The position numbers and the translations under genes are program-made. From NCBI GenBank assembly GCA_977030845.1, contig OZ365113.1, positions 2,604,001 through 2,668,000 of the forward strand: a DNA stretch of 64,000 nucleotides. The letters are read 5' to 3'. Within the stretch, counting starts at the first letter, position 1, and each line of letters begins with the position of its first letter. A model generated the notes under the pieces. That model was not told the origin of the DNA, did not search any database, and was given only the letters and a program-made list of their open reading frames with translations. The stretch comes from Fimbriosthenelais zetlandica. Taxonomy: Eukaryota. Positions 16,663-63,692 of the stretch are shown here, one piece after another.

Positions 16663-19600
16663 ATGGCGGACGATGGGCAGGCTGCCAAACTGAAGGAGGA
16701 AATAGACTTCCTTACTAGTGAGTTATCATTATTTTAAGCGAATATTTTAACACAAAAGGAACCTTTAGGAACTAAAGAATCTAGTAGATACCAAAAGTGT
16801 ACATTTTGATTCTTTTCTGTCACTATATTCGGTAATTTCTCTATTATCGACGATCATGCTGTGGCCTATTTTGCAATCCTCTTGAGGCTATTCCTGGAAC
16901 TGACAGCTGTAGCAAGTGAGCAACGCCTACGAAAATGAAACGTTTGTGTGGTTATTGTATTGCGAAATAAGATACCTTTTCAGTCGGTCCATAATTTTGA
17001 CGTTTCAGATTTGATCAATGACGCTAAGAGTAAGAGAAGTGCGTACTATGGGAAACCCAGGTCGTTCAACCAGCAGAACTTTTCCCACAGAAAATGGACC
17101 AATCCTTCCCAAGGTTCATCCAGAAATATTACTAAACCCCCTACTACTGGTGAGCTCTAGTTGTGTTTTAGATGTACGTCAATTTCCTTAGCAAGTGTGT
17201 ACAAATATAGGCCTACCGGTAGCTTGATTTCTTTATTCTAATAATCCCAGGCAATAGAATTAAATAGTGCAGTACTACCATATGTTACGAATTCGTATGA
17301 ATTCACCGTTGAGTAAGTTGATGAAATTTCCTAAATTTAATTTTAATATAGATTCTACCTTAAAAACATAAAATGAAATAATGAATATAAATTCTCCGAA
17401 TATAGGTGATGAATTCTTTGAAATTTATTAAATTTATTAAATTGTTAAGTTGTTAATGATTTTTATAAATTCTTTTTATTTAGAATCGCAGAAATCCCAG
17501 CAAAATCCACCGATGAAAGTAGAATCAGCAATGACGGTATCACGTACTGTTGTGCCACCTAGTGGCTCATCCTTCAAACTCCCAGGACCGGCAAAGACTA
17601 CAACCTCTATACCCCCAACACACCCCACAACCCAAACAACCCAGAACAGGCAGGTGGCCATACCAAAAACTAAATACCCAAACTTTAAACCTCCTGGAAG
17701 TCCAAAATCCACGGTCCATGTCCAACAACGAAAGAAAGTAGTTGGGACACCTGTGGTTAATCCGAAAGTTCAAAGACATGTATTTTCATCTGGCAGTTCT
17801 AGTTCAGGGTTGAAGAATGTCCAAGCTGTCCGACCCTTTAGTGCAGGGAGTCAAAGCCCCACCATCATCCAAGCAGGGAAAAAAATAATCGAGGAAATAG
17901 AAAAGTTGAAAAAAGCTCAGGATGCATTGGAGAAAGCAGAGAAAATGAGAGGGAAAATGGGAAGTAGCTCAAAGTTAAAGACTTCCAAACCAAATCTGAC
18001 GACAGAGAGAAAGAGTGGTGCTAATTATGAACAGAAACTTGTTCAAAACGTGGACCAGAAGCCTGGTCCAAAAGTGGACCAGAAGCCTGGTACAAAAGTC
18101 GGATCTACAGCTCCCTCTCTGAACGTAGTAAGGAACACAAGGTATACACTAGTCAAAAAATCACAGGCAGCAGAAGCACATTCCTTCCCAGCTCCAAAAA
18201 TACCTGCTCAAAACCCAAATATCAAAGCAAAGACGCACAACAGAACTGTCATATCAAATGTAACTGCTCAATCACGGAATCCAAATGTTTGGACACGACA
18301 AGCGGTGCAAAGCCGAAAGATACCGACCAAAAATGGTCCTCCCCTGGTCAAAATATCAACGTCAAATACACTGACTCATTCCAGTTCAAATGTGACCATG
18401 CCAAAGACGCCTGTGATGGCTCAAGCTAGAACATCAACCCCAAATTTATCAAATCAAGTGAGAAAATCTCCATTGTTGAGTGGGAATCGGGAAGTTAAAT
18501 TACAACGGAATCAAATATCTGGTAATAGATATAGTTTAGTCAGGAGTAGTGAGACGTCAAAACGAACTGTGAAGTCACCCCAGGGGATTCAACGACGAAG
18601 GGTGGTGGTCACTAGAAATAAACTCTACAACAGTCCAGTACCGAATAATAAATATAAACTGGTCAAAAAACATAGCACCACTTCAGCTACTGGACAGGCA
18701 GCTAGCCCTAAACCAAAAACTGTGGCTCAACCCTCAAAAGTGAAGTCTGAACTTAAAGAAAGTAAAGTTGAACCTAAAAAGAAGCAGTCGTCGTCGGTAG
18801 TGAATGAGTTATTAAGGGAGTTATCCGTTATAGATATTGCTTTTAAAACAGCCAAACTTCAGTCAAGTCAGAGGTTGGTGCGTAAAGCGGTCATGATGAA
18901 ACAAAAGTCACTACAGAGGAGAAACACAGAGAGTCGTAGTCCAAATACGGCCAGCGGTACGGGCAAGTGGGGGACGTCTGGACGACGTAGGTCCAGATCA
19001 CGGTCTACGTCAGCTCATGTAAAGTCAGACCCACGTCATGCTACGTCAGGTCACGTCCCCCCACGTCATGCTACGTCAACTCACATCCCCCCACGTCATG
19101 TCAGACCCGGCGTCTCACCGCGTCATGTGACGTCACGTTACGTCAGACCCGGCGTTTCACCACGTCATCCCACGTCAGGTCATGTCAGATCTAGGAAGCA
19201 CCAGTCCAGATTCTCGCTGAGAAAGAACACAGCAGGTCTGTTTCTATTTTTAAACGATTTTTGTTTTGCTTTTTTTTAATCTATTTCTCAAAGAAATGTA
19301 ATTTTTAGCTAGGAAAATTACATTATTTTATACTTTCACCTATTTTTTTTTAACAGTTAAAAGTTAATTTCTATTTGCAGATGAGAGCCTTAGTATGAAC
19401 CAGTTACTGGGGAGGAAGATAAAGAACCTGAGTTGTAACAAGTACAAGTTTGTGAGTGCCGGGGGTGAGAGAGGAGCGAAGACTCCCGACAAAACTAAAG
19501 TTACATCAACTAAACTCAGGTAATGTCACAAATTTTACAACTATTAAAATGGTTTATCTGTGAGTTCAAGATTTACAACTGTTAAAACATTTTTTTATCT

Positions 19601-51359: not shown

Positions 51360-51571
51360 NNNNNNNNNNNNNNNNNNNNNNNNNNNNNNNNNNNNNNNNN
51401 NNNNNNNNNNNNNNNNNNNNNNNNNNNNNNNNNNNNNNNNNNNNNNNNNNNNNNNNNNNNNNNNNNNNNNNNNNNNNNNNNNNNNNNNNNNNNNNNNNNN
51501 NNNNNNNNNNNNNNNNNNNNNNNNNNNNNNNNNNNNNNNNNNNNNNNNNNNNNNNNNNNNNNNNNNNNNNN
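51360..51571. other. Assembly gap (N run)
   Basis: N characters. Confidence 0.99.
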
Positions 51572-52482
51572 GTGGTTTTACTCTATAGCTGCCAAGGCTA
51601 TAATATTATTTACTCAGTTCTAGAAGGTCACAAGTCTGAATTAAAAAAAAAATTAAATACCCATATTTGGGAGTACATGTACTAGTAACCTTAGTGCATT
51701 GACAGAAGAAACCAGGACAGATCCTCTTTAATACTTTGAAGTCTTTTTTTATGGAGAGCCCGGGAAGAATGGAACTCATTTTAAACTAGATCTCTTCCAG
51801 GGTAAACTTTATTTTTTTTCCACAATTTACTTGCTTTAATCATGAGTTTTTTGTTTGCTTTTTATCTGCTTTTGATATGATTGATGAACATGTATGTATG
51901 AGTCATAGAAATTATGTATGACACTTTTTTTATTGTAATGATATGTTTTGATTTACACTTGGTTACACGTGATTTTTGAAGAGAAAGTAAATATAGGAAG
52001 TTACTATATTTGGCCAATGCTTCTGTTTTAGCATAATTACTAATGTAGGCACGAGGATATCAGAACAGGGCAGAAGTCTCTATCTATCTTACTACTGAAT
52101 GTTAAAAAATATAAAAGTATATATATTTCCTATACACTAAAAATGAAGTTATAGAACAATTCCCTGCATAGGGGTAAATTAAAAATAACAGGGGGAGAGT
52201 TGGAAACTTAAAAAATATCTTGACAAAAACCGAACTCCCCTTATAGCCCCACTCAAAGAAAATTAATATTAACAAGATAATTCATAAAATATTATAAATA
52301 ACAAATACATTAATCTTTTCTTCAAATTTTAATAAGATATAATTCATTTAGTTAATAACCATTCATTAGCAATGCTGTCTCTAATCTAAAGGCTTCTCAG
52401 TGAAGTTATTAAGATATAAAGATTTCCCATATCGCACAGATTTACAGAATTACAGGTGTATAAAAATAATGGTTTGAGAATA

Positions 52483-53053: not shown

Positions 53054-55434
53054 TACTGTGGATTTAGGAGTGGGAGTTGTATGTATAGTGTCGTCATTTT
53101 ACTGAGAGATGACTGTAGTGTTGAGATGATAGTTCGGGCGACCATCCCAATCATTCTACAGATTGGATCCTTTGGGAGAATAGTACAACTGACACAGTGA
53201 CCTACTTCACTAACCATGCTCCTTATCATTCCCACAGGATATATCACTAGACTTTCACAACTCCTTCAATTATTATTAAATCTTTAAATTTGATAACAAT
53301 ATCAATCCTTTCTATCCTTTCTATGGGACGCTGAAAAACCCGTGCAAGTCTAGTATTTTCTTTGATCTTATTGTCCCAAACTTCAATAGGAAATATAGGC
53401 GGTAGAATTTTTTTTTTGGTGATTTAAATAATAAAAAATGGATGTCATTGTGTCAAATCTAGGTTTGAAGCATTTACCTTAGAACCTCTGATTAAAGGGA
53501 ATGTCAAGTGTTTTTGCCACAGACCATGTCTCTGTCTGGGTTGGATTCGACCACTGGTATATAAATCACTTGGTATCGGCTATATTAATATAAAAACTTC
53601 TATTTTTTTCTTTTTTTGTGCCAGCATTTCTGGTCTCTAATATGAGTGTTGACCATGGAACTCATGGATTCTCCTCATTGGACATATTGCCTTGTAGGTT
53701 TTCATGAAAATGCCTGAAGCTGCAAAATTTCAGAGAAGTGTACACATGTTAGTTTGAAAACAAAAGGAGAGACTGAAATTATAAATGTTGTACTGGAGCT
53801 TTAACAGGCCACATGTTACAGTAGTGTACTGGGGGACCTGTAGGCATTCCTCACTCACTCATGCATGGTCTCTCCTCCCTCCATGTTCAGTCCTACTAAA
53901 AATCTTATAATATGTGCCGAAATTAAGCCCAAGAACCCCCTTCCCCCACCCCACCCCAAAAGTTGAAAAAAATGTCTCAATTGTGTTCTGAGAGACAATG
54001 AAAATAATATAAAATAATATTAAATAATTTTAACTTCAATGGCTATTAGTATCCGCGTTCAAAGAGGTTCAAATATTCTGAGGTGGCTTTTATTAGGGGA
54101 TTTACCATTGAGTTCTATTTATATATTAGGGGGTTTACATTAAGGATGTGGTCTTTATTTATAGACATTACGGTAGCTTCCTCTGGCTCTGTTTCCTTAA
54201 ATACATAATACTAGTATCCCATCTCAGCCATTGATATCACCAACCACTGGGTCATAATAGATGGAAATATATCAGAAAAAAACCAGTTTTGTAGCTTTGT
54301 TTAAGTTACACTGTACAAATGCCTTTATTATGACACTTAAAACCACCAAAAGACCTATGGATGCTATTATCTTAAATCTCAGATTTTTATGACTAAAATG
54401 TTTGAATATTCTTTACCTTGTGTAGTTGTCTGTAAATATAATGTTGAGTGGTACATATGGGTCTTTAAAGCGGTGCTATCACTCATCCTTTCCCTGTACA
54501 AATTTAAGTTCAACTATTCTCCACTGCTCTTATTTTTGCCAACAATTTAATTCTAACAGTGTGACTTACTTCCAAGGATTTCCAAGATTTTTCCAGCCAA
54601 TACACAGCCTAAAGTCTGGCTCTAATTTCTACATGTTTCCAAGTCATTGTAAACGCATTTTTTCGGTTCAGATAGCATGAATCTAGGTATACCTGACATA
54701 GATTCAGATTAAGTGATTAGTGATAGAGCCGCTTTAATTATAGCTAACAGCTATGAGTCAGTGACTCAGCTGTCATGACTCTGAGACTGACTTCATAGTT
54801 CTCGTGTCAGATGTCTCTTGGGAACCTCGCCAACAATAGTCGAGGAAGTCAAAACAGGGGAAAATCATTGAAGTTTCCTTATAAATAGTGTAGGAGGATT
54901 TGGTAGGGGGTATAGCAGTCTAGATGTGCCCTAGATTTTGTGTGTATCCGGGTATATCCCAAAAAATTGCAAAATTATCTGTTACCCCATCCTGAGAAGA
55001 AAATTAACTTCTGGGCTTGAAAATAGTATAGTCACCTCTCTGAAGCGAAAATCGTAAAGTGACCACTAAATGGTCAGAACCAAATGTTCCACCCCTGAGA
55101 CATACTCACTAAAGCGACCGTCTCACTGTCCTAACTTTGTAAGGCAAATAAATAAATCTATTTTACTCTCGTCGGCTTTATGAGAGTCCATTCTGTGAGC
55201 ATTTTCCACACATTGTTGATCCTGTTTTGGATTATTTTCTTCCTCATTTTTACACCTATTTTTACTCATTCTTGTACCTGTCTTGAGTTGTGTAGAGATT
55301 TATTCACTGACTCATTACCTGTTTTGATGTCCACTCATTAACATTGTTGTACGTGTTTATTAACATTGTTATACGTGTTTTATTTTAGATCAGTTTTCAG
55401 GGCTGGCGGTAGAGCCGTGCAGCCAGCCGCTGTC

Positions 55435-55646
55435 ATGGCTAACGCCACTAAATTCACGCGCTTTATTAGCACTATCATGCCAAACAAGAAGAAAAAAAAC
55501 CGAAAGAGCGAGGACGAGGGCGACATGATCATCTCAGGCCCCATCAACGTCAAACATGAGTGGCATGTAGGATTTGATGAAACGACGGGGGATTTTGAGG
55601 GCCTGCCCCCAGCCTGGTCTCAATGGTTGCAGAACTCTAATATCAG
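55435..55646 (+). CDS. PAK: PAK alternative CRIB/PBD exon A
   Basis: [70 protein letters not shown]; acceptor at 55388, phase-2 donor TCTAATATCAG/GT. Confidence 0.9.
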
Positions 55647-58600
55647 GTAACATTCTAATCAAGTAACACTCTCTCTATCCTACCCTCATAGGTCCACTCC
55701 CAATATCTGCGGTGAGAGGCATGAAAAAGTCCAGCCATGTCTCCCATTGTCTGTGGTGAGAGGCATGTTAAAGGCCAGCCATGTCTTGCACTGTCTGCGG
55801 CGAGAGGCATTGCTGACGTTCGAGAAGAGCAGAATGTTGTATGTCGACTGCTTGTTTTCTCCCAGCCCTGATAAAAATGATAAACTCTCAATTCACATGT
55901 ATTTTCTTCTTCAGTATGTCTGTGAATCATTTTTGTTTCATTTTTACCTTCAAAACCTTTCTTCGACGATCTTAAAACCATATTAAAAGCCATGACTGAT
56001 GCCTTCAAAATTACCCATGGTTTCTAGAAAATGACCTTTTTATGATGTGGAAATTTACCATGATTTGAAGTCAAGAATACATGTGGAAGGTGGAGTGAGT
56101 TTTGTTTCTTTCAGATGCTGTTCTTGTAAGCCGCGGTAGTTTTTTTCATGAAGGAATCAAGGCATTATCTTCATTATATCCCATTTAATCAGTTTCTAAT
56201 GAGCAGACTTCTAATCTCTCTCCTCAGGCTGCCTACCTATGGCTCCCCTATGACTCTCACTAAGTGATTTACTGTTCAGCCAACATGATGAAAATTTTTG
56301 GCCGGAAAAAAGGATCGCTGGACATCCAGCCTCGGATGGTGCCGGAGCCCCCGCCCACCACCATCAACATCTCACCCCCGACTGACTTTAAACATAGAGT
56401 CCATGTTGGCTTTGATCAGATGACTGGGCAGTTCCAGGGATTGCCCCCAGCATGGGGTCAATGGCTGATGACCTCTAATATCAGGTGAGTGTGTCTCCTA
56501 TAGTGGCCTGGTCCTAATCAGGGGGGGGGGGGGGGGGTGAGGGGGATCACCACCCCCCACCTACCCACTCTAACATGGCTCATTCACTGCTCACTATGTG
56601 TCTATATAGAATTTAAATATGAAACTGAGACTTTGTTATACTTGAAATAACAGATTTTGAAAAATTAATATTCAAAATTCGTATTATTAATAGTTTTTGG
56701 AAATTATTGGATTATTTTCTGATAAAAAAATTTGTATTTTAAAGAAATTTGCTATGAAAATTACTTGCCTATTTGGTAACTCTTTAGGATAAAATGTCTG
56801 GAAATATAACGAATCATTTCAAAGAAATTTCTGTAATTCAAATTTGTTAAATGGTATTTTATATCAAGTATTAGTCTCATGATGTTCTTGCAGTGTTTAA
56901 GACAATTTCTGGTTGAAAAGACTTCTCAAAAATGAGGAGAAAAAGAAAATAAGACACAAAAGTGAGTTTGTTGAATTAGCAGTGTAAGTGATAAACTGCA
57001 GGACGAAGCAGAGAGGAGCTAATAATATGGGTCAGTCTTAAACAGTCAAACCAGTCGTTAATTTAGATTACTGTACTTCATATAAAGTACTTCAACAAAT
57101 CCAGATCATCAAATCATACAAAAATACGAATTCTGAGTGACAACTATTGTAGTTTTCTAATATTTAGTTATAGATAGGTTTCTTTGTCATTCTAATGTTT
57201 TTTATTCATATTAGTTTGCTTTGAAACCTTCAGAAAATAAGTAAGTGTCTAAATACAAAAGATAAGTGGAATATTATAAAAAATAATCGACAGAATTTAC
57301 TTGAAATGATTGTAATTTGAAAGAAGTGAATGGTGGGTATTGCGTAATCTAAGTCCTTCCTTAAATTCTTTAATATTTAGCTGAATTTTAAGTTAATTCC
57401 ATTGTAAAAAAGAGCTTCTCCCTACAACTATATATATATGCCACAGAAATCATAGTTTATTAAGTATTTGAGTTTGTTCACACACAAAAAACTTTCAGTT
57501 GAATATTACGTGCAACAGAAAGACATAAAGCTTCGTTAAGTAAATATAATGACTGAACAAGGAAATTTGGGAGGGGAAGGTGAAAAATGATTCTATTATT
57601 GAAAGTGTGAAAGGAAAGCAAAATATGTTCAATTAATTCTTAGAATTCTAAAATTTTAACTCCAAAATAACTGGCTAATCAACCTCCCGGGCTAACCCAC
57701 GGTAGATCATCTTAATGGGTTGATATTAAATCATCAGTAAGCTTCCTATATCTCTGCCTCTGCCATAGAAACCAACATACTAATGCTTCTAGCTCAATGG
57801 TTGCACACTTAGATCTATACATCAAATCCCGAGCATAAAAAATACAACAAAATCTACTGATAACTTGGTGACAGTAAGGTGTGAGAATCTGGTTAAAATT
57901 GGCTGGAATTTATACTATAATATTGCTGGTAATTATTATTAGTGCATTACCCATATATGATGAGTTACTTCACTCTGCTTCGTTAATACTGGAAGGCCGT
58001 CTAGAGGAGATGCACTCAGTCTCTCGGTACTTTATGTTGCCTGGGAAGCTAGTTTTGTTGAATATTCATGATATTTCCCACTCTGTACTCATCATGTTTA
58101 ATATGTTCTCTTCTAACATACAATTGATCCAGGGATGTAAGATTTGGCAGGCAGTTGACCCGCGTTTTGAAATTATTTTATTTTCAAATCGCTTCTTTTG
58201 TGGTTCTTTTCTCCATTTTGTTTGGAGAGTTGATTGAAATGGGGTATCTTTATTCTAATTTTCAAATTAACTTGGCAAATTTTCTTCAAAATTGTCAAGC
58301 TTTATTTTACTTGCCTGACTTGCAAACCTGGGTCACAGTATTTAAACTTGTCTCATACTTTCCTAACGTTTATATTTAACTTTCGGAAGAGATAATTTCC
58401 AAATTAAAGACCTAAATGAAATACCAGTGTATTGCTTGTGAATCACTAGCATCCCTGTGTTAGGTTTTGTCCTTTTAAGGGCGATACCAATATTATAGTT
58501 GGTATATAATCCTCATCCATTGAAGGTGCCAGTGACGGCCTTTCGCTGTTCACTGTTTGCCTTAAACTGGAGCTAAGGATGGATGGGGAATTGTTTACCT

Positions 58601-61600
58601 ACTTTTATTACTGTAGATCACATTTTACTATGAGCACATTCACTACAACTGCTTACCATTGATTCAGGCTTGCAAGGCATTTATAGTGATTATTTTTTCT
58701 CTCAGAAAATTGCTTGAATTTCAAATGTTTCATTTCTTGTTCCTGTTTTCCATTGAATCAGAAAAGACAAGGAATAATGTTGTAACAATGCCGAAAATAT
58801 TATTTAAAAAAAATAATATTATTTATCTCAAAGTGCTTTCAAAATTAGATTTTCAGAAAGACTATCAGAAATTAGTTTTTTTTTTAGCCAACTGACTTGC
58901 ATCCCTGTGTACTATTATATACTGCTATTAACCTTTATTCCACTAAAATAGGTTCTTTTGTATTTCATCTAGATTACAGGTTTTTCATCTCAAGGATTTG
59001 GACTTTCTAGATTTCAGAATCCCCAGTCATTTGACCCGACCTTGTGAAAATGAATTTAAAGATGAATAACTGTTTTGAAATTATAAATTTGTGTTTCATT
59101 TCGATCTATGCTCATTTAAGAAATTCTAATGAAATATACTCATATCAAAAGAATTATCAACGAAAAAATGTTTTAATATGATATATAATAGTTGAACACT
59201 TTTTTCAGCAGATTTATCTTTTCGTAAAGTTGCATTATTTTAACTACAAAAATTTCAGGACGGAATAATTTCGCTTTTTCCTATCAAGAATTATTTTTGA
59301 AAATTGTATGGAGTAAGTTTAGCTATTTCAATCTGAGACTATGTAATTGAGAATTGTTAAATAGTTTTTTTGCTGTGTCGCTGGGAGACAGTGAGTGACA
59401 TGAAGATGTTCACCTTTCAGTAAATCTGAACAGACACAGAACCCTAATGCAGTCATCAACGCCCTCAAAGCCTTTGAGAAGTCCGTGAAGAGTAAAGATC
59501 ATATAAAATACATGGGCACCAACTCTATAGGTGAAATCATCGAGGAGGATGACGACGAAGGTTAGTCATTGTTTTTTTTATTCAAAAAATGTTTTTTTAT
59601 TCAAACATTTCTACAGCTTTGAAGTCAAATAGCCAGTTATCTGGCTGTATTTCTATTAAATAAGCTGTGCCTAGGTGGCTACAATTTAGTATCAAATATT
59701 AGGACAAAGAGGTATTTAAATCTTTAATCTTAATTTTAAAAAAAATAAAAATATTTCTAATTCAGAAAATGTGTTCATTGTCCTGCAACATAATATTACA
59801 ACAATAGTAAGCCTACCTACGTAGGGATTAACATTTTCATAAAAAATCAAAAAATTTTCAATGGATAAAAAAGGTTTTCTTGTCATATTGGTCAGGGAAA
59901 TATTATTAAATTGTCAGGGAAAAGTCATGGAATTTGGGCAATCCCCCTTTGTGGCAACTCTGAATAGTGCGGCTCCTTGTTCAATTTTCTTCCGAGTTTG
60001 TAATAATTCTATGTGATTTTTGTGACTGTTACTTGTTGAATTTTCGTCCGAGTTTGTAATAATTTTGTATGATTTTTGTGCCTGTAGGTTCTGATAAGTC
60101 ACGTGACTCGGCTGTGGACCCGGCACCCGTCACGTCGTTTGAGGAGGAGCAGGAGGAGGAGGAGCGAGGAGGAGGAGGCCGGGAGGAGAACACGATACAC
60201 GTTAAACATATAAAACCTAAAACAGTGGAGGAGAAGGGGTGGGACGAATGGACGCCCACTGACGACATGCCCCCCACAGCCACTCCCGTGAGTTATCTGC
60301 TGCTGCTGGCCTTAAACACAAATTTAAATTCTTAAAAAAAAAGCGAGATATACAAGGATTTAGAAAGAAAAATTGTTATAACTATAAACATGGTTCTCAC
60401 AGAAATTCATTAAAAATTGTGTATAACCGGGAAAAGTCTGGTAAAATTGCAGTTCTATGACCTCGGTGGACAATGAGCTTCTGCTCTTAGGCACTATAGA
60501 TGCCAAGTATAGATGGAAAGTTATAGAATTTAAGATATTATTACTTGACATGTAACGATCGTCTGAGATTGCCACAGTCCAACTCTTCAAGCGCTGATAT
60601 TTTATTACTTCTGTTTCGGTTCTTTCAGCCTATTAATTTTACAACTTTTGATAAATTTGCAGCAAGCGGAAAAATCCTCGAAGAAGACGCCGGAGAGGAC
60701 TCAAAGTGTGAAGGAGATGTCTAAAAAGTTTGAGAATTTAGCCACGGATACAAAGAAGGAAGACGGGGAGCGGAAACCAACCATGAGGAAAAAATCCATG
60801 AAGAAAGTAAAAATGACAGACGACCAGATCATGGCATCCTTACGTGAGTTCACTATTATTTACTCTAATATTTATTTCGGATATTTTCTGGAAAGGTGGG
60901 ATACAAGATAATGGAGTTAGCTCTGTGGGTAAGAGTGACAAAACTTTCAAGGGGCTACCAATCTTCGCAGGGAGTCAGAAATACTTGTAGTACAGAAGGC
61001 AGCATTGTCACTAAAAATCAGTTGCTAAAAACACTCTCTTATCACTGAGACATCTATGAAAGCTGCGAATTTCATGAGAATTTTAAAATTATTCTTTTTT
61101 ACAGGAAAACTGGTCAATTCTGAAGACCCCAGTAAATTGTACGAGATCAAGAAACGAGTAGGAGCAGGGTGAGTATTATTACTCCATAAACTATCTAAAT
61201 TACTCTGCTTTTACTGACAAAGAAATCTGCCATAATAAGCTGCAAAATAATGAAAAATGTAAGTGGGTGCAAGCCCATATATTTACATATACAAGTACAA
61301 GTGAAAGCCATTGATCCGGAAATATGTTCGACAAGTGAAATTTAACACTGATTTCCTCTACAAAAAGGCTTGCTCTGATTCCTCATTTTTCATTCCAAGA
61401 TTCTTGAGCCATGGTACAATTAATGACGGCAGATTTCTTAATAGAAACATAGAATTATCTCGTGATAATCTTGAAGCTTAATCGGGTATAGAACAATATA
61501 AATAACTGCTTCTGCTAATTTACATTTAGTCGGTAGCCTACCAGTATTGGTTTTGGTAAGTACAGAGGTAGAGAACTTATTGTACCCAAGTCAGGGTTCC

Positions 61601-63692
61601 CACACGCCATTGAAAATATCCTCAAAAATTGTCAAAATTGTCATGTTTTATTCGGATTTGTATTGGTCATAGATTTTCTTCAGAATTGGAAAAAAATTAA
61701 CAATAATCTTGGGAAATTCTTCTGTCATCGTTTGAGTTTAGGCTTAAATTTAATTGTTGCGTTTCCCTTGAAAACCTTGTAGAAATAACTTAGGATAAAC
61801 CTAAAAAGAATTCTGATTCTGTTTGAGCAAGTTTTGGGAACCCTGCCACTATGATCCCTGTTTTACTGTTGTTTCTTGTCTCCACCCAGCTGTTGTCGCT
61901 CCTGCATGGCATCGTTGTTACTTGGTTGACAATATACTTGCAACTTTCATCCCAACCCTTTATTTTAGCAGCAAACTTCTTGTGAGATTTTGTCATTGTG
62001 AATCAGTTTTTTTGTCACCAATGGATTTAGATTTGAGAATCAGGATTTGCGACAGCTCGTAGGATTTGCGAGTGGTCGTGGTATTATGCAACCTCCCAGT
62101 GTTCTCTCATTTAGTTGTTTAAACACCCAGCATGTTGTGAAATGGTGTGATGTAGTTAGTAGGAACATTCACCAGGCAAATATCAGGGAATTAGAAACAT
62201 TCACCACGGAAATAACAGGGAATTAGAAACATTCAAGAATAACCAAAATTCATGAGGGAAATATGGGGGAATTTGGAACATTTGTGAGGGAAATGTAGGG
62301 AAACTATGCGGGAAATTAGAGACATTTGTGAAGGAACTTGGAACATTGCTGATTGAAAATTTGGAACAGTCTTGAGGGGATATTTCGGAGGGTAAGTTTA
62401 GGCGAATTTGGTACATTCGGGAGGACGATATGTTGGTAATTTGGAATCCTCAAGCATTATGGGGTGTGAATGTATAATATACTGTATATATCTATAAATG
62501 TTTTGTATAATACATTTTTTATCATAAAATATAATAATATACCTTGTGTTACAGAGCTGCGGGCACGGTATGTGAAGCGGTCGTGATTGAGACTCGTAAC
62601 GCTGTCGCCATCAAAATGATGGACCTGGAAAACCAGCCCAAAAAAGAGCTCATCATCACGGAAATAGAGGTCAGTATCAAAACACATTAATCTCCAAGAT
62701 ATTTTGTTGGGTGGGATCAATTCAGAGCTCCAGCTCATTCAGGGAGTTAGCTCAGAGCACCAGCTCATTCAGGGAGTTAGCTCAGAGCATCAACTTATTC
62801 AGAGAATTAGCTCAGAGCACCAGCTCATTCAGGGAGTTAGCTCAGAGCACCAGCTCATTCAGGGAGTTAGCTCAGAGCTCCAGTTCATTCAGGGAGTTAG
62901 CTCAGAGCATCAGCTCATTCAGGGAGTTAGCTCAGAGCTCCAGTTCATTCAGGGAGTTAGCTCAGAGCATCAGCTCATTCAGGGAGTTAGCTCAGAGCAT
63001 CAGCTCATTCAGGGAGTTAGCTCAGAGCTCCAGTTCATTCAGGGAGTTAGCTCAGAGCATCAGCTCATTCAGGGAGTTAGCTCAGAGCATCAGCTCATTC
63101 AGGGAGTTAGCTCAGAGCATCAGCTCATTCAGGTCAGTTTTCTGAGAAATACTTGTCACTCAGAAACTATCATAGACATGATGATGATGCACTGAAATAT
63201 TCCCTAAAAAACACTCAAAAATGCTACTGCAATTGCTGCATTTGTTTCATTGCTGTCTTCTCCTAAATAACCAAGGAATTATTAATTAACTAATTAATGA
63301 TTGTTAACTAATGAACTAATTAATATCCAGGTGATGAAGGAGTACATCCACCCTAACATTGTCAACTACCTCGACTCCTTCCTGGTGAAGAAAGAGCTGT
63401 GGATCGTCATGGAATACCTGGAGGGGGGCGCACTGACTGACGTGGTCACTGAGACTGTACTCAACGAGGGCCAGATCGCAGGCATCTGCCAGGAATGCCT
63501 CAAGGCACTGGAGTTCCTGCACGCCCGGGACATCATTCATCGAGATATAAAGAGTGATAATGTCCTGCTTGGGATGAATGGTCAGGTGAAACTGACTGAC
63601 TTCGGCTTCTGTGCTCAGATCACACCTGACCGGGACAAGAGGAACACCATGGTCGGCACCCCCTACTGGATGGCTCCAGAAGTAGTGACCAG
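55435..63692 (+). CDS. PAK: p21-activated kinase (group I-type, resembling the invertebrate Pak3 clade), 3'-incomplete
   Basis: CRIB exon A 55435-55646 or CRIB exon B 56285-56484, then 59421-59560, 60088-60287, 60663-60843, 61105-61168, 62555-62669, 63331-63692, all phase-consistent. Kinase motifs [53 protein letters not shown] and [18 protein letters not shown]. Confidence 0.95.
55697..55810 (+). repeat. 44-bp minisatellite array (about 2.6 units) between the two PAK CRIB exons
   Basis: CTGCGGTGAGAGGCATGAAAAAGTCCAGCCATGTCTCCCATTGTCTGTGGTGAGAGGCATG... Confidence 0.88.
56285..56484 (+). CDS. PAK: PAK alternative CRIB/PBD exon B
   Basis: [66 protein letters not shown]; same phase-2 donor TCTAATATCAG/GT. 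Confidence 0.9.
61592..61845. mobile_element. Possible hAT-like MITE (11-bp TIR CAGGGTTCCCA), no matching TSD
   Basis: CAGGGTTCCCA at 61592 and TGGGAACCCTG ending at 61845. The 8-bp flanks differ (ACCCAAGT vs CCACTATG). The same terminus also occurs at 50881. Confidence 0.45.
62722..63132. repeat. 30-bp tandem repeat (about 13.7 copies) in a PAK intron
   Basis: Unit CAGCTCATTCAGGGAGTTAGCTCAGAGCAY in register from 62731 to 63120. Confidence 0.97.

What the first reader, a model, noticed from the sequence alone, without database searches (positions are those of the whole stretch)
55389..59560. PAK carries two tandem-duplicated, mutually exclusive CRIB exons: a swappable GTPase-sensing module
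Seen: exon A (55435-55646) and exon B (56285-56484) each have their own ATG, encode a full CRIB/PBD, and end with the identical TCTAATATCAG/GT phase-2 donor that fits the common exon at 59421 ([12 protein letters not shown]). Splicing A to B via the acceptors at 56279 or 56227 is out of frame, and B has an in-frame TAA at 56261, so a double-CRIB protein is unlikely. The CRIBs differ: B is canonical ([13 protein letters not shown]); A has Val for the conserved Phe ([13 protein letters not shown]) and an upstream polybasic tract KKKKNRK. Known: the CRIB plus adjacent basic residues govern Cdc42/Rac binding and membrane recruitment of group I PAKs. Inference: one kinase gene yields isoforms with different upstream GTPase or lipid inputs. 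I cannot say whether this is already described in this lineage.
Basis: partly seen in the sequence, partly recalled or inferred. Interest (0 to 1): 0.75.

Follow-up and report, generated by a model that had tools for sequence, protein, structure and literature searches.

The report
PAK kinase with two alternative CRIB exons
A signalling kinase gene (PAK) in this probably annelid genome holds two old, still-selected copies of the exon that supplies its start codon and its Cdc42/Rac-binding module, almost certainly used one at a time, so one gene should make two kinases with different input ends; related worms and oysters show the same design, but no paper describing it was found.

Summary
Exon A (ATG 55435 to 55646) and exon B (ATG 56285 to 56484) each encode Met, a basic stretch and a CRIB/PBD. 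Both end in a phase-2 CAG|GT donor that fits the common exon at 59421, giving complete ORFs of 532 and 528 aa. Including both exons gives a stop at codon 106.

The gene is a short (about 480-530 aa) group I PAK found across spiralians. It is separate from the canonical PAK1-like gene and the group II PAK elsewhere in this genome.

Three other annelid genomes keep the A-then-B tandem, and two of them have a third copy. Between the window and its nearest relative the introns cannot be aligned, yet both exons are intact (dN/dS about 0.07 for A, 0.13 for B).

A transcript of that relative maps as two 5'UTR exons, then A, then the common exon, skipping B. Other annelid transcriptomes hold B-only mRNAs. 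RefSeq annotates oyster isoforms of the orthologous gene that differ only by such an exon.

Not shown: use of either exon in this species, because no RNA run was listed. It is also unresolved whether B is chosen by splicing or has its own promoter, and whether the two modules differ in function.

Verdict: a new member of a known kind, of moderate interest.

The parts
55401..55646 (+). Exon A. The acceptor gttttcag| lies at 55399-55400, the ATG at 55435 and the donor CAG|GTAACA after 55646 (phase 2). It encodes MANATKF..., a KKKKNRK basic tract, an acidic stretch and the [20 protein letters not shown]...GLPPAW...SNI.
   Evidence: Pfam PBD 52.8 bits. The acceptor is placed by homology with L016/L017, where transcript L025 joins 5'UTR exon 2 to the equivalent ttttcag| site. 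dN/dS against L016 is 0.07.
55647..56279 (+). Intron between A and B (633 nt if B starts at 56280). It holds a 44-nt tandem repeat x2.6 at 55697-55810. Whether it also holds a promoter for B is unresolved.
   Evidence: It cannot be aligned with the relative except for about 15 nt before the B ATG.
56280..56484 (+). Exon B. A candidate acceptor ctgttcag| lies at 56278-56279, the ATG at 56285 and the donor CAG|GTGAGT after 56484 (phase 2). It encodes [14 protein letters not shown]..., a Pro-rich PEPPPTT stretch and the canonical [20 protein letters not shown]...GLPPAW...SNI.
   Evidence: Pfam PBD 57.8 bits. In-frame TAA at 56261. dN/dS against L016 B' is 0.13. The exon start is inferred, not shown.
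59421..59560 (+). Common exon C. It completes the Ser codon left open by A or B, then encodes [21 protein letters not shown]... (the rest of the PBD and the start of the autoinhibitory region).
   Evidence: It is 94% identical in protein to L016. The junction [15 protein letters not shown] is present in the relative's mRNA P0173/L025.
60088..60287 (+). Exon D (acidic linker).
   Evidence: Splice sites read. The whole model translates without stops. The start aligns to L025.
60663..60843 (+). Exon E (basic linker, ...[11 protein letters not shown]).
61105..61168 (+). Exon F ([21 protein letters not shown], the start of the kinase domain).
62555..62669 (+). Exon G (kinase subdomains I-II, ...[21 protein letters not shown]).
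63331..63692 (+). Exon H (kinase core, HRDIKSDN...DFG...). The last coding exon lies outside the window at L015:1145-1469 (G000:C19:2669145-2669469), with stop TAA.
   Evidence: Pfam Pkinase 134 bits..

Best explanation
This is a spiralian short group I p21-activated kinase. Its whole N-terminal input module exists in two tandem, anciently diverged exon versions: the start codon, the basic region, the CRIB and almost all of the GTPase-contacting PBD. A mature mRNA carries A or B, never both, joined by the same phase-2 donor to common exon C. The results are a 532-aa A isoform and a 528-aa B isoform. They share the rest of the autoinhibitory region and the kinase domain. Shown: the anatomy; conservation of both copies under purifying selection; A-to-C splicing that skips B in a close relative; and B-to-C mRNAs in other annelids. 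Inferred for this window: both exons are spliced from shared upstream non-coding exons, as A is in the relative. Transcripts that include both are cut short at codon 106 and would probably be removed by nonsense-mediated decay. Also inferred: the two modules give the kinase different upstream inputs. A keeps a polybasic tract next to the CRIB, like the PAK1 lipid/Rac-sensitive basic region. B replaces that tract with a proline-rich stretch and carries an N-terminal basic-Ser motif ([KR][KR]xS-like) shared by B-type exons of other annelids. So the isoforms should differ in membrane or GTPase affinity, or in control by phosphorylation.
For: - Anatomy and frames.
- Exactly two copies in the window.
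- The same A-then-B tandem occurs in L016/L017, L020 and Paralvinella palmiformis L029.
- Introns cannot be aligned between window and L016 while both exons are intact (pN 0.118 / pS 0.689 for A, pN 0.294 / pS 0.732 for B).
- mRNA contig L025 (P0173, 82% identical to isoform A) maps to L017 as UTR1, UTR2, A', C' and onward at 100% identity in most exons, skipping B'.
- Full-length B-type transcripts P0181, P0188 and P0189 begin at the B-type Met and join the common exon. The one 5'UTR read, that of P0188 (contig L026), has no A exon in it.
- RefSeq isoforms of the orthologous oyster gene are identical after the CRIB exon. Examples are Ostrea edulis X2 (XP_048738641) against X1/X3, and Saccostrea cucullata and S. 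echinata. The two exons lie 570 bp apart, and joining them gives an immediate stop.
- Both exons cover the 46-residue PAK fragment solved in complex with Cdc42 (1E0A, 1EES).
Against: - No RNA run could be listed for this species, so neither junction is shown here.
- No single annelid species yielded both isoforms in the databases reached. The only same-species evidence is oyster RefSeq prediction.
- The B exon of the window is the most diverged B copy. It has a long branch and falls outside the supported B clade.
- In L020 and Paralvinella the nearest AG would join the copies in frame, so decay of double-inclusion mRNAs is not a conserved safeguard.
- The acceptor of B is inferred only from a YAG and about 15 conserved bases.
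- Functional divergence is untested.
Confidence: 0.75

Rival explanations
1. Variable first exons rather than splicing choice. B (and the third copies in other species) has its own transcription start inside the A-B intron, as in UGT1A or clustered protocadherin genes. Exclusivity then follows from promoter choice, because B has no working acceptor. The protein outcome is the same two isoforms.
For: - Each copy keeps its own ATG within 4-37 nt of its putative start.
- The frame relation between copies is not conserved (in frame in L020 and Paralvinella).
- Pyrimidine tracts before B-type exons are weak in L020 and Paralvinella.
- The B-type mRNA L026 has a 168-nt leader that would fit inside such an intron.
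Against: - Exon A itself is internal in the relative, so the array is not made only of first exons.
- Window and L016 share the stretch cag|ccaa(c/g)ATG in an otherwise unalignable intron.
- The oyster alternative exon has a good pyrimidine tract plus AG and lies between an upstream coding exon and the main exon.
- RefSeq lists two accession numbers for the oyster X2 protein, which may mean spliced 5'UTR variants.
Confidence: 0.4
2. Only exon A is used in this species. B is a conserved-looking but silent or decaying duplicate, or serves only as a decoy exon that sends transcripts to decay.
For: - A-type N-termini dominate the annelid-type full-length transcripts listed (about 20, against 3 B-type).
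- The window's B is the most diverged B copy (58% to L016 B'; long branch).
- The relative's only recovered mRNA is A-type.
Against: - B keeps its ATG, an open 66-codon frame, every CRIB consensus residue, GLPPAW and a consensus donor.
- Neighbouring intron sequence has diverged beyond alignment.
- pN is far below pS.
- B-type mRNAs exist in other annelids.
- A decoy exon would not need a CRIB under protein-level constraint.
Confidence: 0.1
3. Both exons are included together to give a double-CRIB kinase.
For: In L020 and Paralvinella the nearest acceptor would keep the frame. A 153-aa ORF with two CRIBs in a row (P0010) was among the HMMER hits.
Against: In the window every acceptor within 120 nt upstream of B gives a stop, and B's own frame is closed by TAA at 56261. 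None of the full-length spiralian short-PAK hits listed has two CRIBs. The one two-CRIB hit there, P0215, is a 697-aa mammalian PAK2 prediction. L025 skips B.
Confidence: 0.02

Closest known systems
Oyster 'PAK 1-like / Pak-like' RefSeq isoforms (Ostrea edulis XP_048738641/2 = X2 against XP_056001240 = X1 and XP_048738643/4 = X3; also Saccostrea cucullata and S. echinata)
   Same: It is the same orthologous short PAK. There are two tandem CRIB exons about 0.6 kb apart, each with an ATG and the same phase-2 boundary before the common exon (I-S|). The isoforms are identical downstream, and joining both exons gives a stop.
   Different: The exon order is reversed: the divergent alternative exon lies upstream of the main one. 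The oyster alternative CRIB is degenerate (HINID for HVGFD, no GLPxxW). These are database predictions, and I found no paper on them. Common origin with the annelid A/B pair is neither shown nor rejected (AU p 0.25).
Mammalian PAK3 splice variants PAK3b, c and cb (alternative exons b and c)
   Same: Alternative splicing changes the PBD/autoinhibitory region of a group I PAK and with it the kinase's regulation (PMC10017488).
   Different: In PAK3, short cassette exons are inserted after residue 92 and make the kinase constitutively active. The CRIB itself and the N-terminus are not exchanged, and the exons are not duplicates of each other. Here the whole N-terminal module including the start codon is swapped.
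Mutually exclusive exons born by tandem exon duplication (reviewed in PMC9013439 and PMC9741552; Mhc clusters, PMC3912159)
   Same: Adjacent homologous exons have the same phase and similar length and are old and conserved, with one copy per mRNA. Double inclusion breaks the frame in the window.
   Different: The duplicated exon carries the initiator codon, so skipping both leaves no normal start. The frame-shift safeguard is not conserved among species. No competing RNA structure was evident.
Variable-first-exon arrays (UGT1A, clustered protocadherins; from general knowledge, not checked here)
   Same: There is a tandem array of 2-3 alternative exons, each with its own ATG and donor, all joining one set of constant exons and each encoding the ligand-facing N-terminal domain.
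   Different: Exon A is preceded by two non-coding exons in the relative, so at least that copy is not a first exon. Promoters in front of B were not testable.

Membership tests
Group I p21-activated kinase | N-terminal CRIB/PBD (Pfam PF00786) | tested here: met
   A scores 52.8 bits and B 57.8 bits against a cut-off of 21.3. The best PDB matches are PAK1/2/3 PBD chains, not PAK4-6.
Group I p21-activated kinase | C-terminal STE20-type Ser/Thr kinase domain | tested here: met
   Pkinase 134 bits on exon H alone. The full model is 57-82% identical to the nearest annelid-type short PAKs.
Group I p21-activated kinase | Autoinhibitory segment directly after and overlapping the PBD (as opposed to group II) | tested here: inconclusive
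   The common exon continues with [22 protein letters not shown], which aligns with PAK1 TKSEQKKNPQAVLDVLEFY. The kinase-inhibitory segment itself was not modelled.
Group I p21-activated kinase | N-terminal PxxP (Nck) and PIX-binding motifs of canonical PAK1-3 | tested here: not met
   No KPPAPPVR-type motif occurs in either isoform, unlike the canonical PAKs. The genome has a separate canonical PAK1-like gene on C21. This places the gene in a distinct short subfamily and does not remove it from group I.
CRIB motif (I-S-x-P-x(2-4)-F-x-H-x-x-H-V-G) | All consensus residues present | tested here: met
   B reads [14 protein letters not shown], a full match. A reads [14 protein letters not shown], with Val for Phe. 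The same Val occurs in A-type exons of other annelids and in bivalve orthologues.
Mutually exclusive tandem-duplicated exons | Adjacent homologous exons with the same phase and compatible splice sites | tested here: met
   66% identity. Both exons end in a phase-2 donor ATCAG|GT, and both give a full ORF with exon C.
Mutually exclusive tandem-duplicated exons | Each mature mRNA holds exactly one copy | tested here: inconclusive
   This holds in relatives: L025 has A and skips B, there are B-only mRNAs, and the oyster isoforms fit. It was not testable in this species because no RNA run was listed.
Mutually exclusive tandem-duplicated exons | A mechanism that forbids double inclusion (frame shift and decay, steric hindrance, or RNA pairing) | tested here: inconclusive
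   Double inclusion gives a stop at codon 106 in the window, and also stops in L016 and oyster. It stays in frame in L020 and Paralvinella. The intron of 633 nt is too long for steric exclusion, and no convincing docking/selector pairing was found.
Variable-first-exon array (UGT1A / protocadherin type) | Every variable exon is a first exon with its own promoter | tested here: not met
   Exon A' of the relative is the third exon of mRNA L025. Promoters before B are not testable with these tools.

The most novel reading that the evidence does not exclude
The A/B split is an ancient, lineage-wide regulatory device of a spiralian-specific PAK. Two input modules have been kept apart since before the radiation of annelids, and possibly since the annelid-mollusc ancestor. 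The oyster alternative exon shares the N-terminal KKLR-RRS-type motif and the EI[KH]xI lead-in with annelid B exons. On this reading the modules couple one kinase either to classical Cdc42/Rac plus acidic lipids (A) or to a different partner or a phosphorylation switch (B). In some lineages the pair expanded to a three-exon array, a small 'variable sensor, constant kinase' locus.
Probability: 0.25. Interest if true: 0.7.

Novelty: new member of a known kind. Interest (0 to 1): 0.5.

Why it matters
PAKs are the textbook effectors of Cdc42 and Rac. What decides which GTPase, lipid or membrane site switches a given PAK on is usually explained by gene duplication (PAK1/2/3) or, in PAK3, by small insert exons. 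Here one gene exchanges the complete GTPase-contact fragment while keeping the autoinhibitory tail and the kinase constant. That makes a natural, matched pair for asking how much of PAK input specificity sits in the 40 residues around the CRIB and in the basic tract before it. It also shows that current annotations of annelid genomes miss one of the two exons: the Paralvinella model starts at B and omits A. The general principle, tandem exon duplication giving alternative exons, is well known and seems common in this genome, so the finding adds to a known theme rather than opening a new one.

Tried and rejected
- RNA evidence in this species. Two sequencing-run queries (the whole 4.2 kb as rna, and the A-B stretch as any) listed no run; two earlier tries were unanswered. 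Read laying could therefore not be used.
- Same-species A and B transcripts in annelids. Pairwise comparison of 26 annelid-type full-length proteins found no pair identical downstream of the CRIB exon; the best was 89-90%.
- A region-restricted search with the B-type N-terminus of P0188 returned only P0188 and P0181.
- Comparison of 5'UTRs of B-type (L026) and A-type (L027/L028) mRNAs found no similarity at 77% CDS identity, so it was uninformative.
- The relative's 5'UTR exons could not be found in the window by blastn.
- Exon phylogeny. The 67 usable columns left most forks open, and the AU tests rejected nothing at 0.05. The age of the duplication therefore rests on exon position and motifs, not on the tree.
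- Docking/selector RNA pairing. Only AT-rich chance-like inverted repeats turned up.
- Assembly artefact: rejected (the copies are diverged, and both are conserved elsewhere).
- Double-CRIB protein: rejected for this window.
- Complex prediction with Cdc42/Rac was not run, because no eukaryotic GTPase sequence could be supplied by reference.
- Look-ups of Owenia P0209 and Ostrea P0191 gene loci returned no record. The oyster locus was reached through isoform X1 instead.
Full report
**1. What is in the sequence**

- Exon A has an ATG at 55435 and ends at 55646 before GTAACA.
- Exon B has an ATG at 56285 and ends at 56484 before GTGAGT.
- Both leave two bases (AG) that are completed by the T at 59421, after the acceptor tttcag. 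This gives Ser, followed by [11 protein letters not shown].
- Both peptides pass the Pfam PBD threshold (52.8 and 57.8 bits, cut-off 21.3). They cover profile positions 2-39 of 59; the rest of the domain is in the common exon.
- The two are 66% identical over the CRIB part and unrelated in sequence before it.
- B's frame is closed upstream by TAA at 56261.
- Joining A's donor to any AG within 120 nt upstream of B gives a premature stop. Through 56280 the stop is at codon 106.
- An HMM built from 50 such exons finds exactly two copies in the 64-kb window, and no third.

**2. The gene**

I traced the remaining exons using a mussel-type homologue (P0030) and a canonical insect-type Pak (P0114) as guides: C 59421-59560, D 60088-60287, E 60663-60843, F 61105-61168, G 62555-62669 and H 63331-63692. 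The last exon is outside the window at L015:1145-1469.
- With either first coding exon the model is a clean ORF, 532 aa for A and 528 aa for B.
- A profile search shows the gene belongs to a family of short (about 470-530 aa) PAKs. Members occur in bivalves, gastropods, chitons, Lingula, a bryozoan, nemerteans and the annelids Owenia, Capitella and Paralvinella. There is also a look-alike in horseshoe crabs.
- These proteins lack the PPAPPVR-type N-terminus of canonical PAK1-3.
- The same genome has a separate canonical PAK1-like gene on C21 and a group II-like PAK on C11, each with a single CRIB hit.
The nearest proteins here are annelid-type transcripts, which fits.

**3. Conservation**

A Logan assembly of a related species (L016/L017) holds both exons in the same order. 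A' is 79% identical to A, B' is 58% identical to B, and the common exon is 94% identical.
- Apart from exons, nothing in the 12 kb aligns between the two species. The intact ATG, frame, CRIB and donor of both copies therefore reflect selection.
- Nonsynonymous differences are far below synonymous ones: pN 0.118 against pS 0.689 for A, and pN 0.294 against pS 0.732 for B (dS is near saturation, so the ratios of about 0.07 and 0.13 are rough).
- A more distant annelid contig (L020) has three tandem copies, all with an ATG and the ATCAG|GT donor, followed by the common exon.
- Paralvinella palmiformis (L029) has an unannotated A-type exon 380 bp upstream of the B-type exon at which its gene model starts. 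It also has a third copy without an ATG.
- A-type exons share MSK..KFF..., a basic then acidic stretch, M-x-I-[SG][12 protein letters not shown]. B-type exons share a basic-Ser motif (RRKSKGKL.I and similar), EIKxI and P-T-G-F-K-H-E-W-H-V-G.
- The window's B fits this pattern loosely (RKKGSLDI; DFKHRVHVG) and is the most diverged member.
- The exon tree has too few columns. It supports a B clade (99/97) that holds L016 B' but not the window's B. AU tests reject neither one clade of all B exons (p 0.30) nor a recent A-B sister pair in the window (p 0.097).
- Position and flanking motifs, not the tree, are therefore the basis for calling the window's B the orthologue of B'.

**4. RNA evidence from relatives**

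P0173 is a 519-aa protein from a 3966-nt Logan contig (L025) and is 82% identical to isoform A.
- The contig maps to L017 at 100% identity in most exons, as two non-coding exons, then exon A' entered at ttttcag|, then C' and the rest. B' is skipped.
- So A is an internal exon, and the A-to-C junction is real in that species.
- About twenty further annelid-type full-length transcripts in the list carry A-type N-termini joined to the common exon. Three (P0181, P0188, P0189) start at a B-type Met and join the same common exon. The 5'UTR of P0188's contig (L026), the only one read, has no A exon in it.
- I found no species for which both forms were in the database.
- In oysters the evidence is in one species but comes from RefSeq models. 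Ostrea edulis X2 differs from X1/X3 only in the CRIB exon, as do isoforms of two Saccostrea species.
- In the O. edulis locus the alternative exon (18048-18253) lies between an upstream coding exon (10001) and the main CRIB exon (18827-19017). X1 skips it, X2 skips the main exon, and joining both gives Ser-stop.
- The oyster exon order is the reverse of the annelid order. A common origin of the two pairs is open (AU p 0.25).

**5. How the choice is made**

For the window I favour splicing from shared upstream non-coding exons, with double-inclusion mRNAs cut short at codon 106 and probably removed by decay.
- For this view: A is internal in the relative. Window and L016 share the stretch cag|ccaa(c/g)ATG in front of B, in an intron that is otherwise unalignable. 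The frame break holds in both species.
- Against it as a general rule: in L020 and Paralvinella the nearest AG would join the copies in frame, and the pyrimidine tracts there are poor.
- A promoter of B's own inside the A-B intron would explain exclusivity without any safeguard, and I give it about 0.4.
- No docking/selector-type RNA pairing was seen, and the 633-nt intron rules out steric exclusion.

**6. What it should do**

Both exons align over almost the whole 46-residue PAK fragment whose structures with Cdc42 are solved (1E0A, 1EES). B is nearer to it than A, at 47 against 36 bits. The exchange therefore replaces the complete GTPase-contact piece plus everything N-terminal to it. The remainder of the autoinhibitory region and the kinase stay constant.
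- A has KKKKNRK some 9-15 residues before the CRIB. From general knowledge (not tested here), this is where PAK1 has the basic residues needed for acidic-lipid and Rac-dependent activation.
- B has PEPPPTT at that place and a basic-Ser motif at its N-terminus.
- A carries Val for the consensus Phe, but that Val is the norm in annelid A-type exons and in bivalve orthologues, so it is not a defect.
- Different GTPase or lipid affinity, or a phosphorylation switch on B, is a reasonable expectation. It remains inference.

**7. Comparison and novelty**

Full-text searches for alternative or mutually exclusive CRIB exons in PAKs found nothing relevant.
- The nearest described case is mammalian PAK3. 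Its cassette exons b and c are inserted after residue 92 of the PBD/autoinhibitory region and make the kinase constitutively active (PMC10017488). That is an insertion into the module, not an exchange of it.
- Tandem exon duplication giving mutually exclusive exons is a well-described class (PMC9013439, PMC9741552). Earlier notes of this scan list many such pairs in this same genome.
- Oyster RefSeq already carries comparable isoforms.

I therefore file this as a new member of a known kind. It is solid as an observation and conserved enough to be functional. It offers a useful natural experiment on PAK input specificity, but it is not a new principle.

Noticed in passing
window 62722-63133: A 30-bp satellite (13.7 copies, 92% matches) sits inside the PAK intron between exons G and H. 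More than 200 near-identical places occur across the contigs of the genome.
   Followed up: partly
window 55697-55810 and 55337-55380: A 44-nt tandem repeat x2.6 lies directly after exon A's donor, and a 22-nt repeat x2 lies just before exon A's acceptor. Any role in exon choice is unknown.
   Followed up: no
window 56521-56540: A run of about 20 G lies 36 nt downstream of exon B's donor. G-runs near donors can act as splicing enhancers. Not examined.
   Followed up: no
window about 51360-51590: A run of N (gap or masked) lies upstream of the gene. It was left as it is.
   Followed up: no
L029:9412-9620 and L029:14023-14229 (Paralvinella palmiformis JAODUP010000333.1): The deposited gene model LSH36_332g02032 starts at the B-type exon and misses an intact A-type CRIB exon 380 bp upstream. 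A third CRIB exon copy 3.8 kb downstream has a donor but no ATG.
   Followed up: partly
L020:5856-6052: There is a third tandem CRIB exon, with its own ATG and donor, in another annelid contig. It groups with B-type exons (99/97), so the array has grown by a further B duplication in that lineage.
   Followed up: partly
G000:C21:27782356-27782424 (L004) and G000:C11:46593557-46593658 (L003): The genome also has a canonical PAK1-like gene, whose CRIB is split by an intron after ...HTGEF, and a group II (PAK4/mbt-like) CRIB. Neither is duplicated.
   Followed up: partly
P0003, P0004, P0038 (HMMER hits): These are proteins of 286-616 aa with no kinase domain, made of 4-8 CRIB-like repeats, each followed by a conserved helical unit (...GVP..V..A..KAG.T.EQV..NP.L..D.LY..D...). 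Their origin and function are unknown.
   Followed up: no
P0010 (ENA contig, 153 aa): A single open frame holds two CRIB motifs in a row (NVTHDVHVEYD... then NVKHQFHVEFN...). This may be a genome in which two copies are fused in one exon.
   Followed up: no
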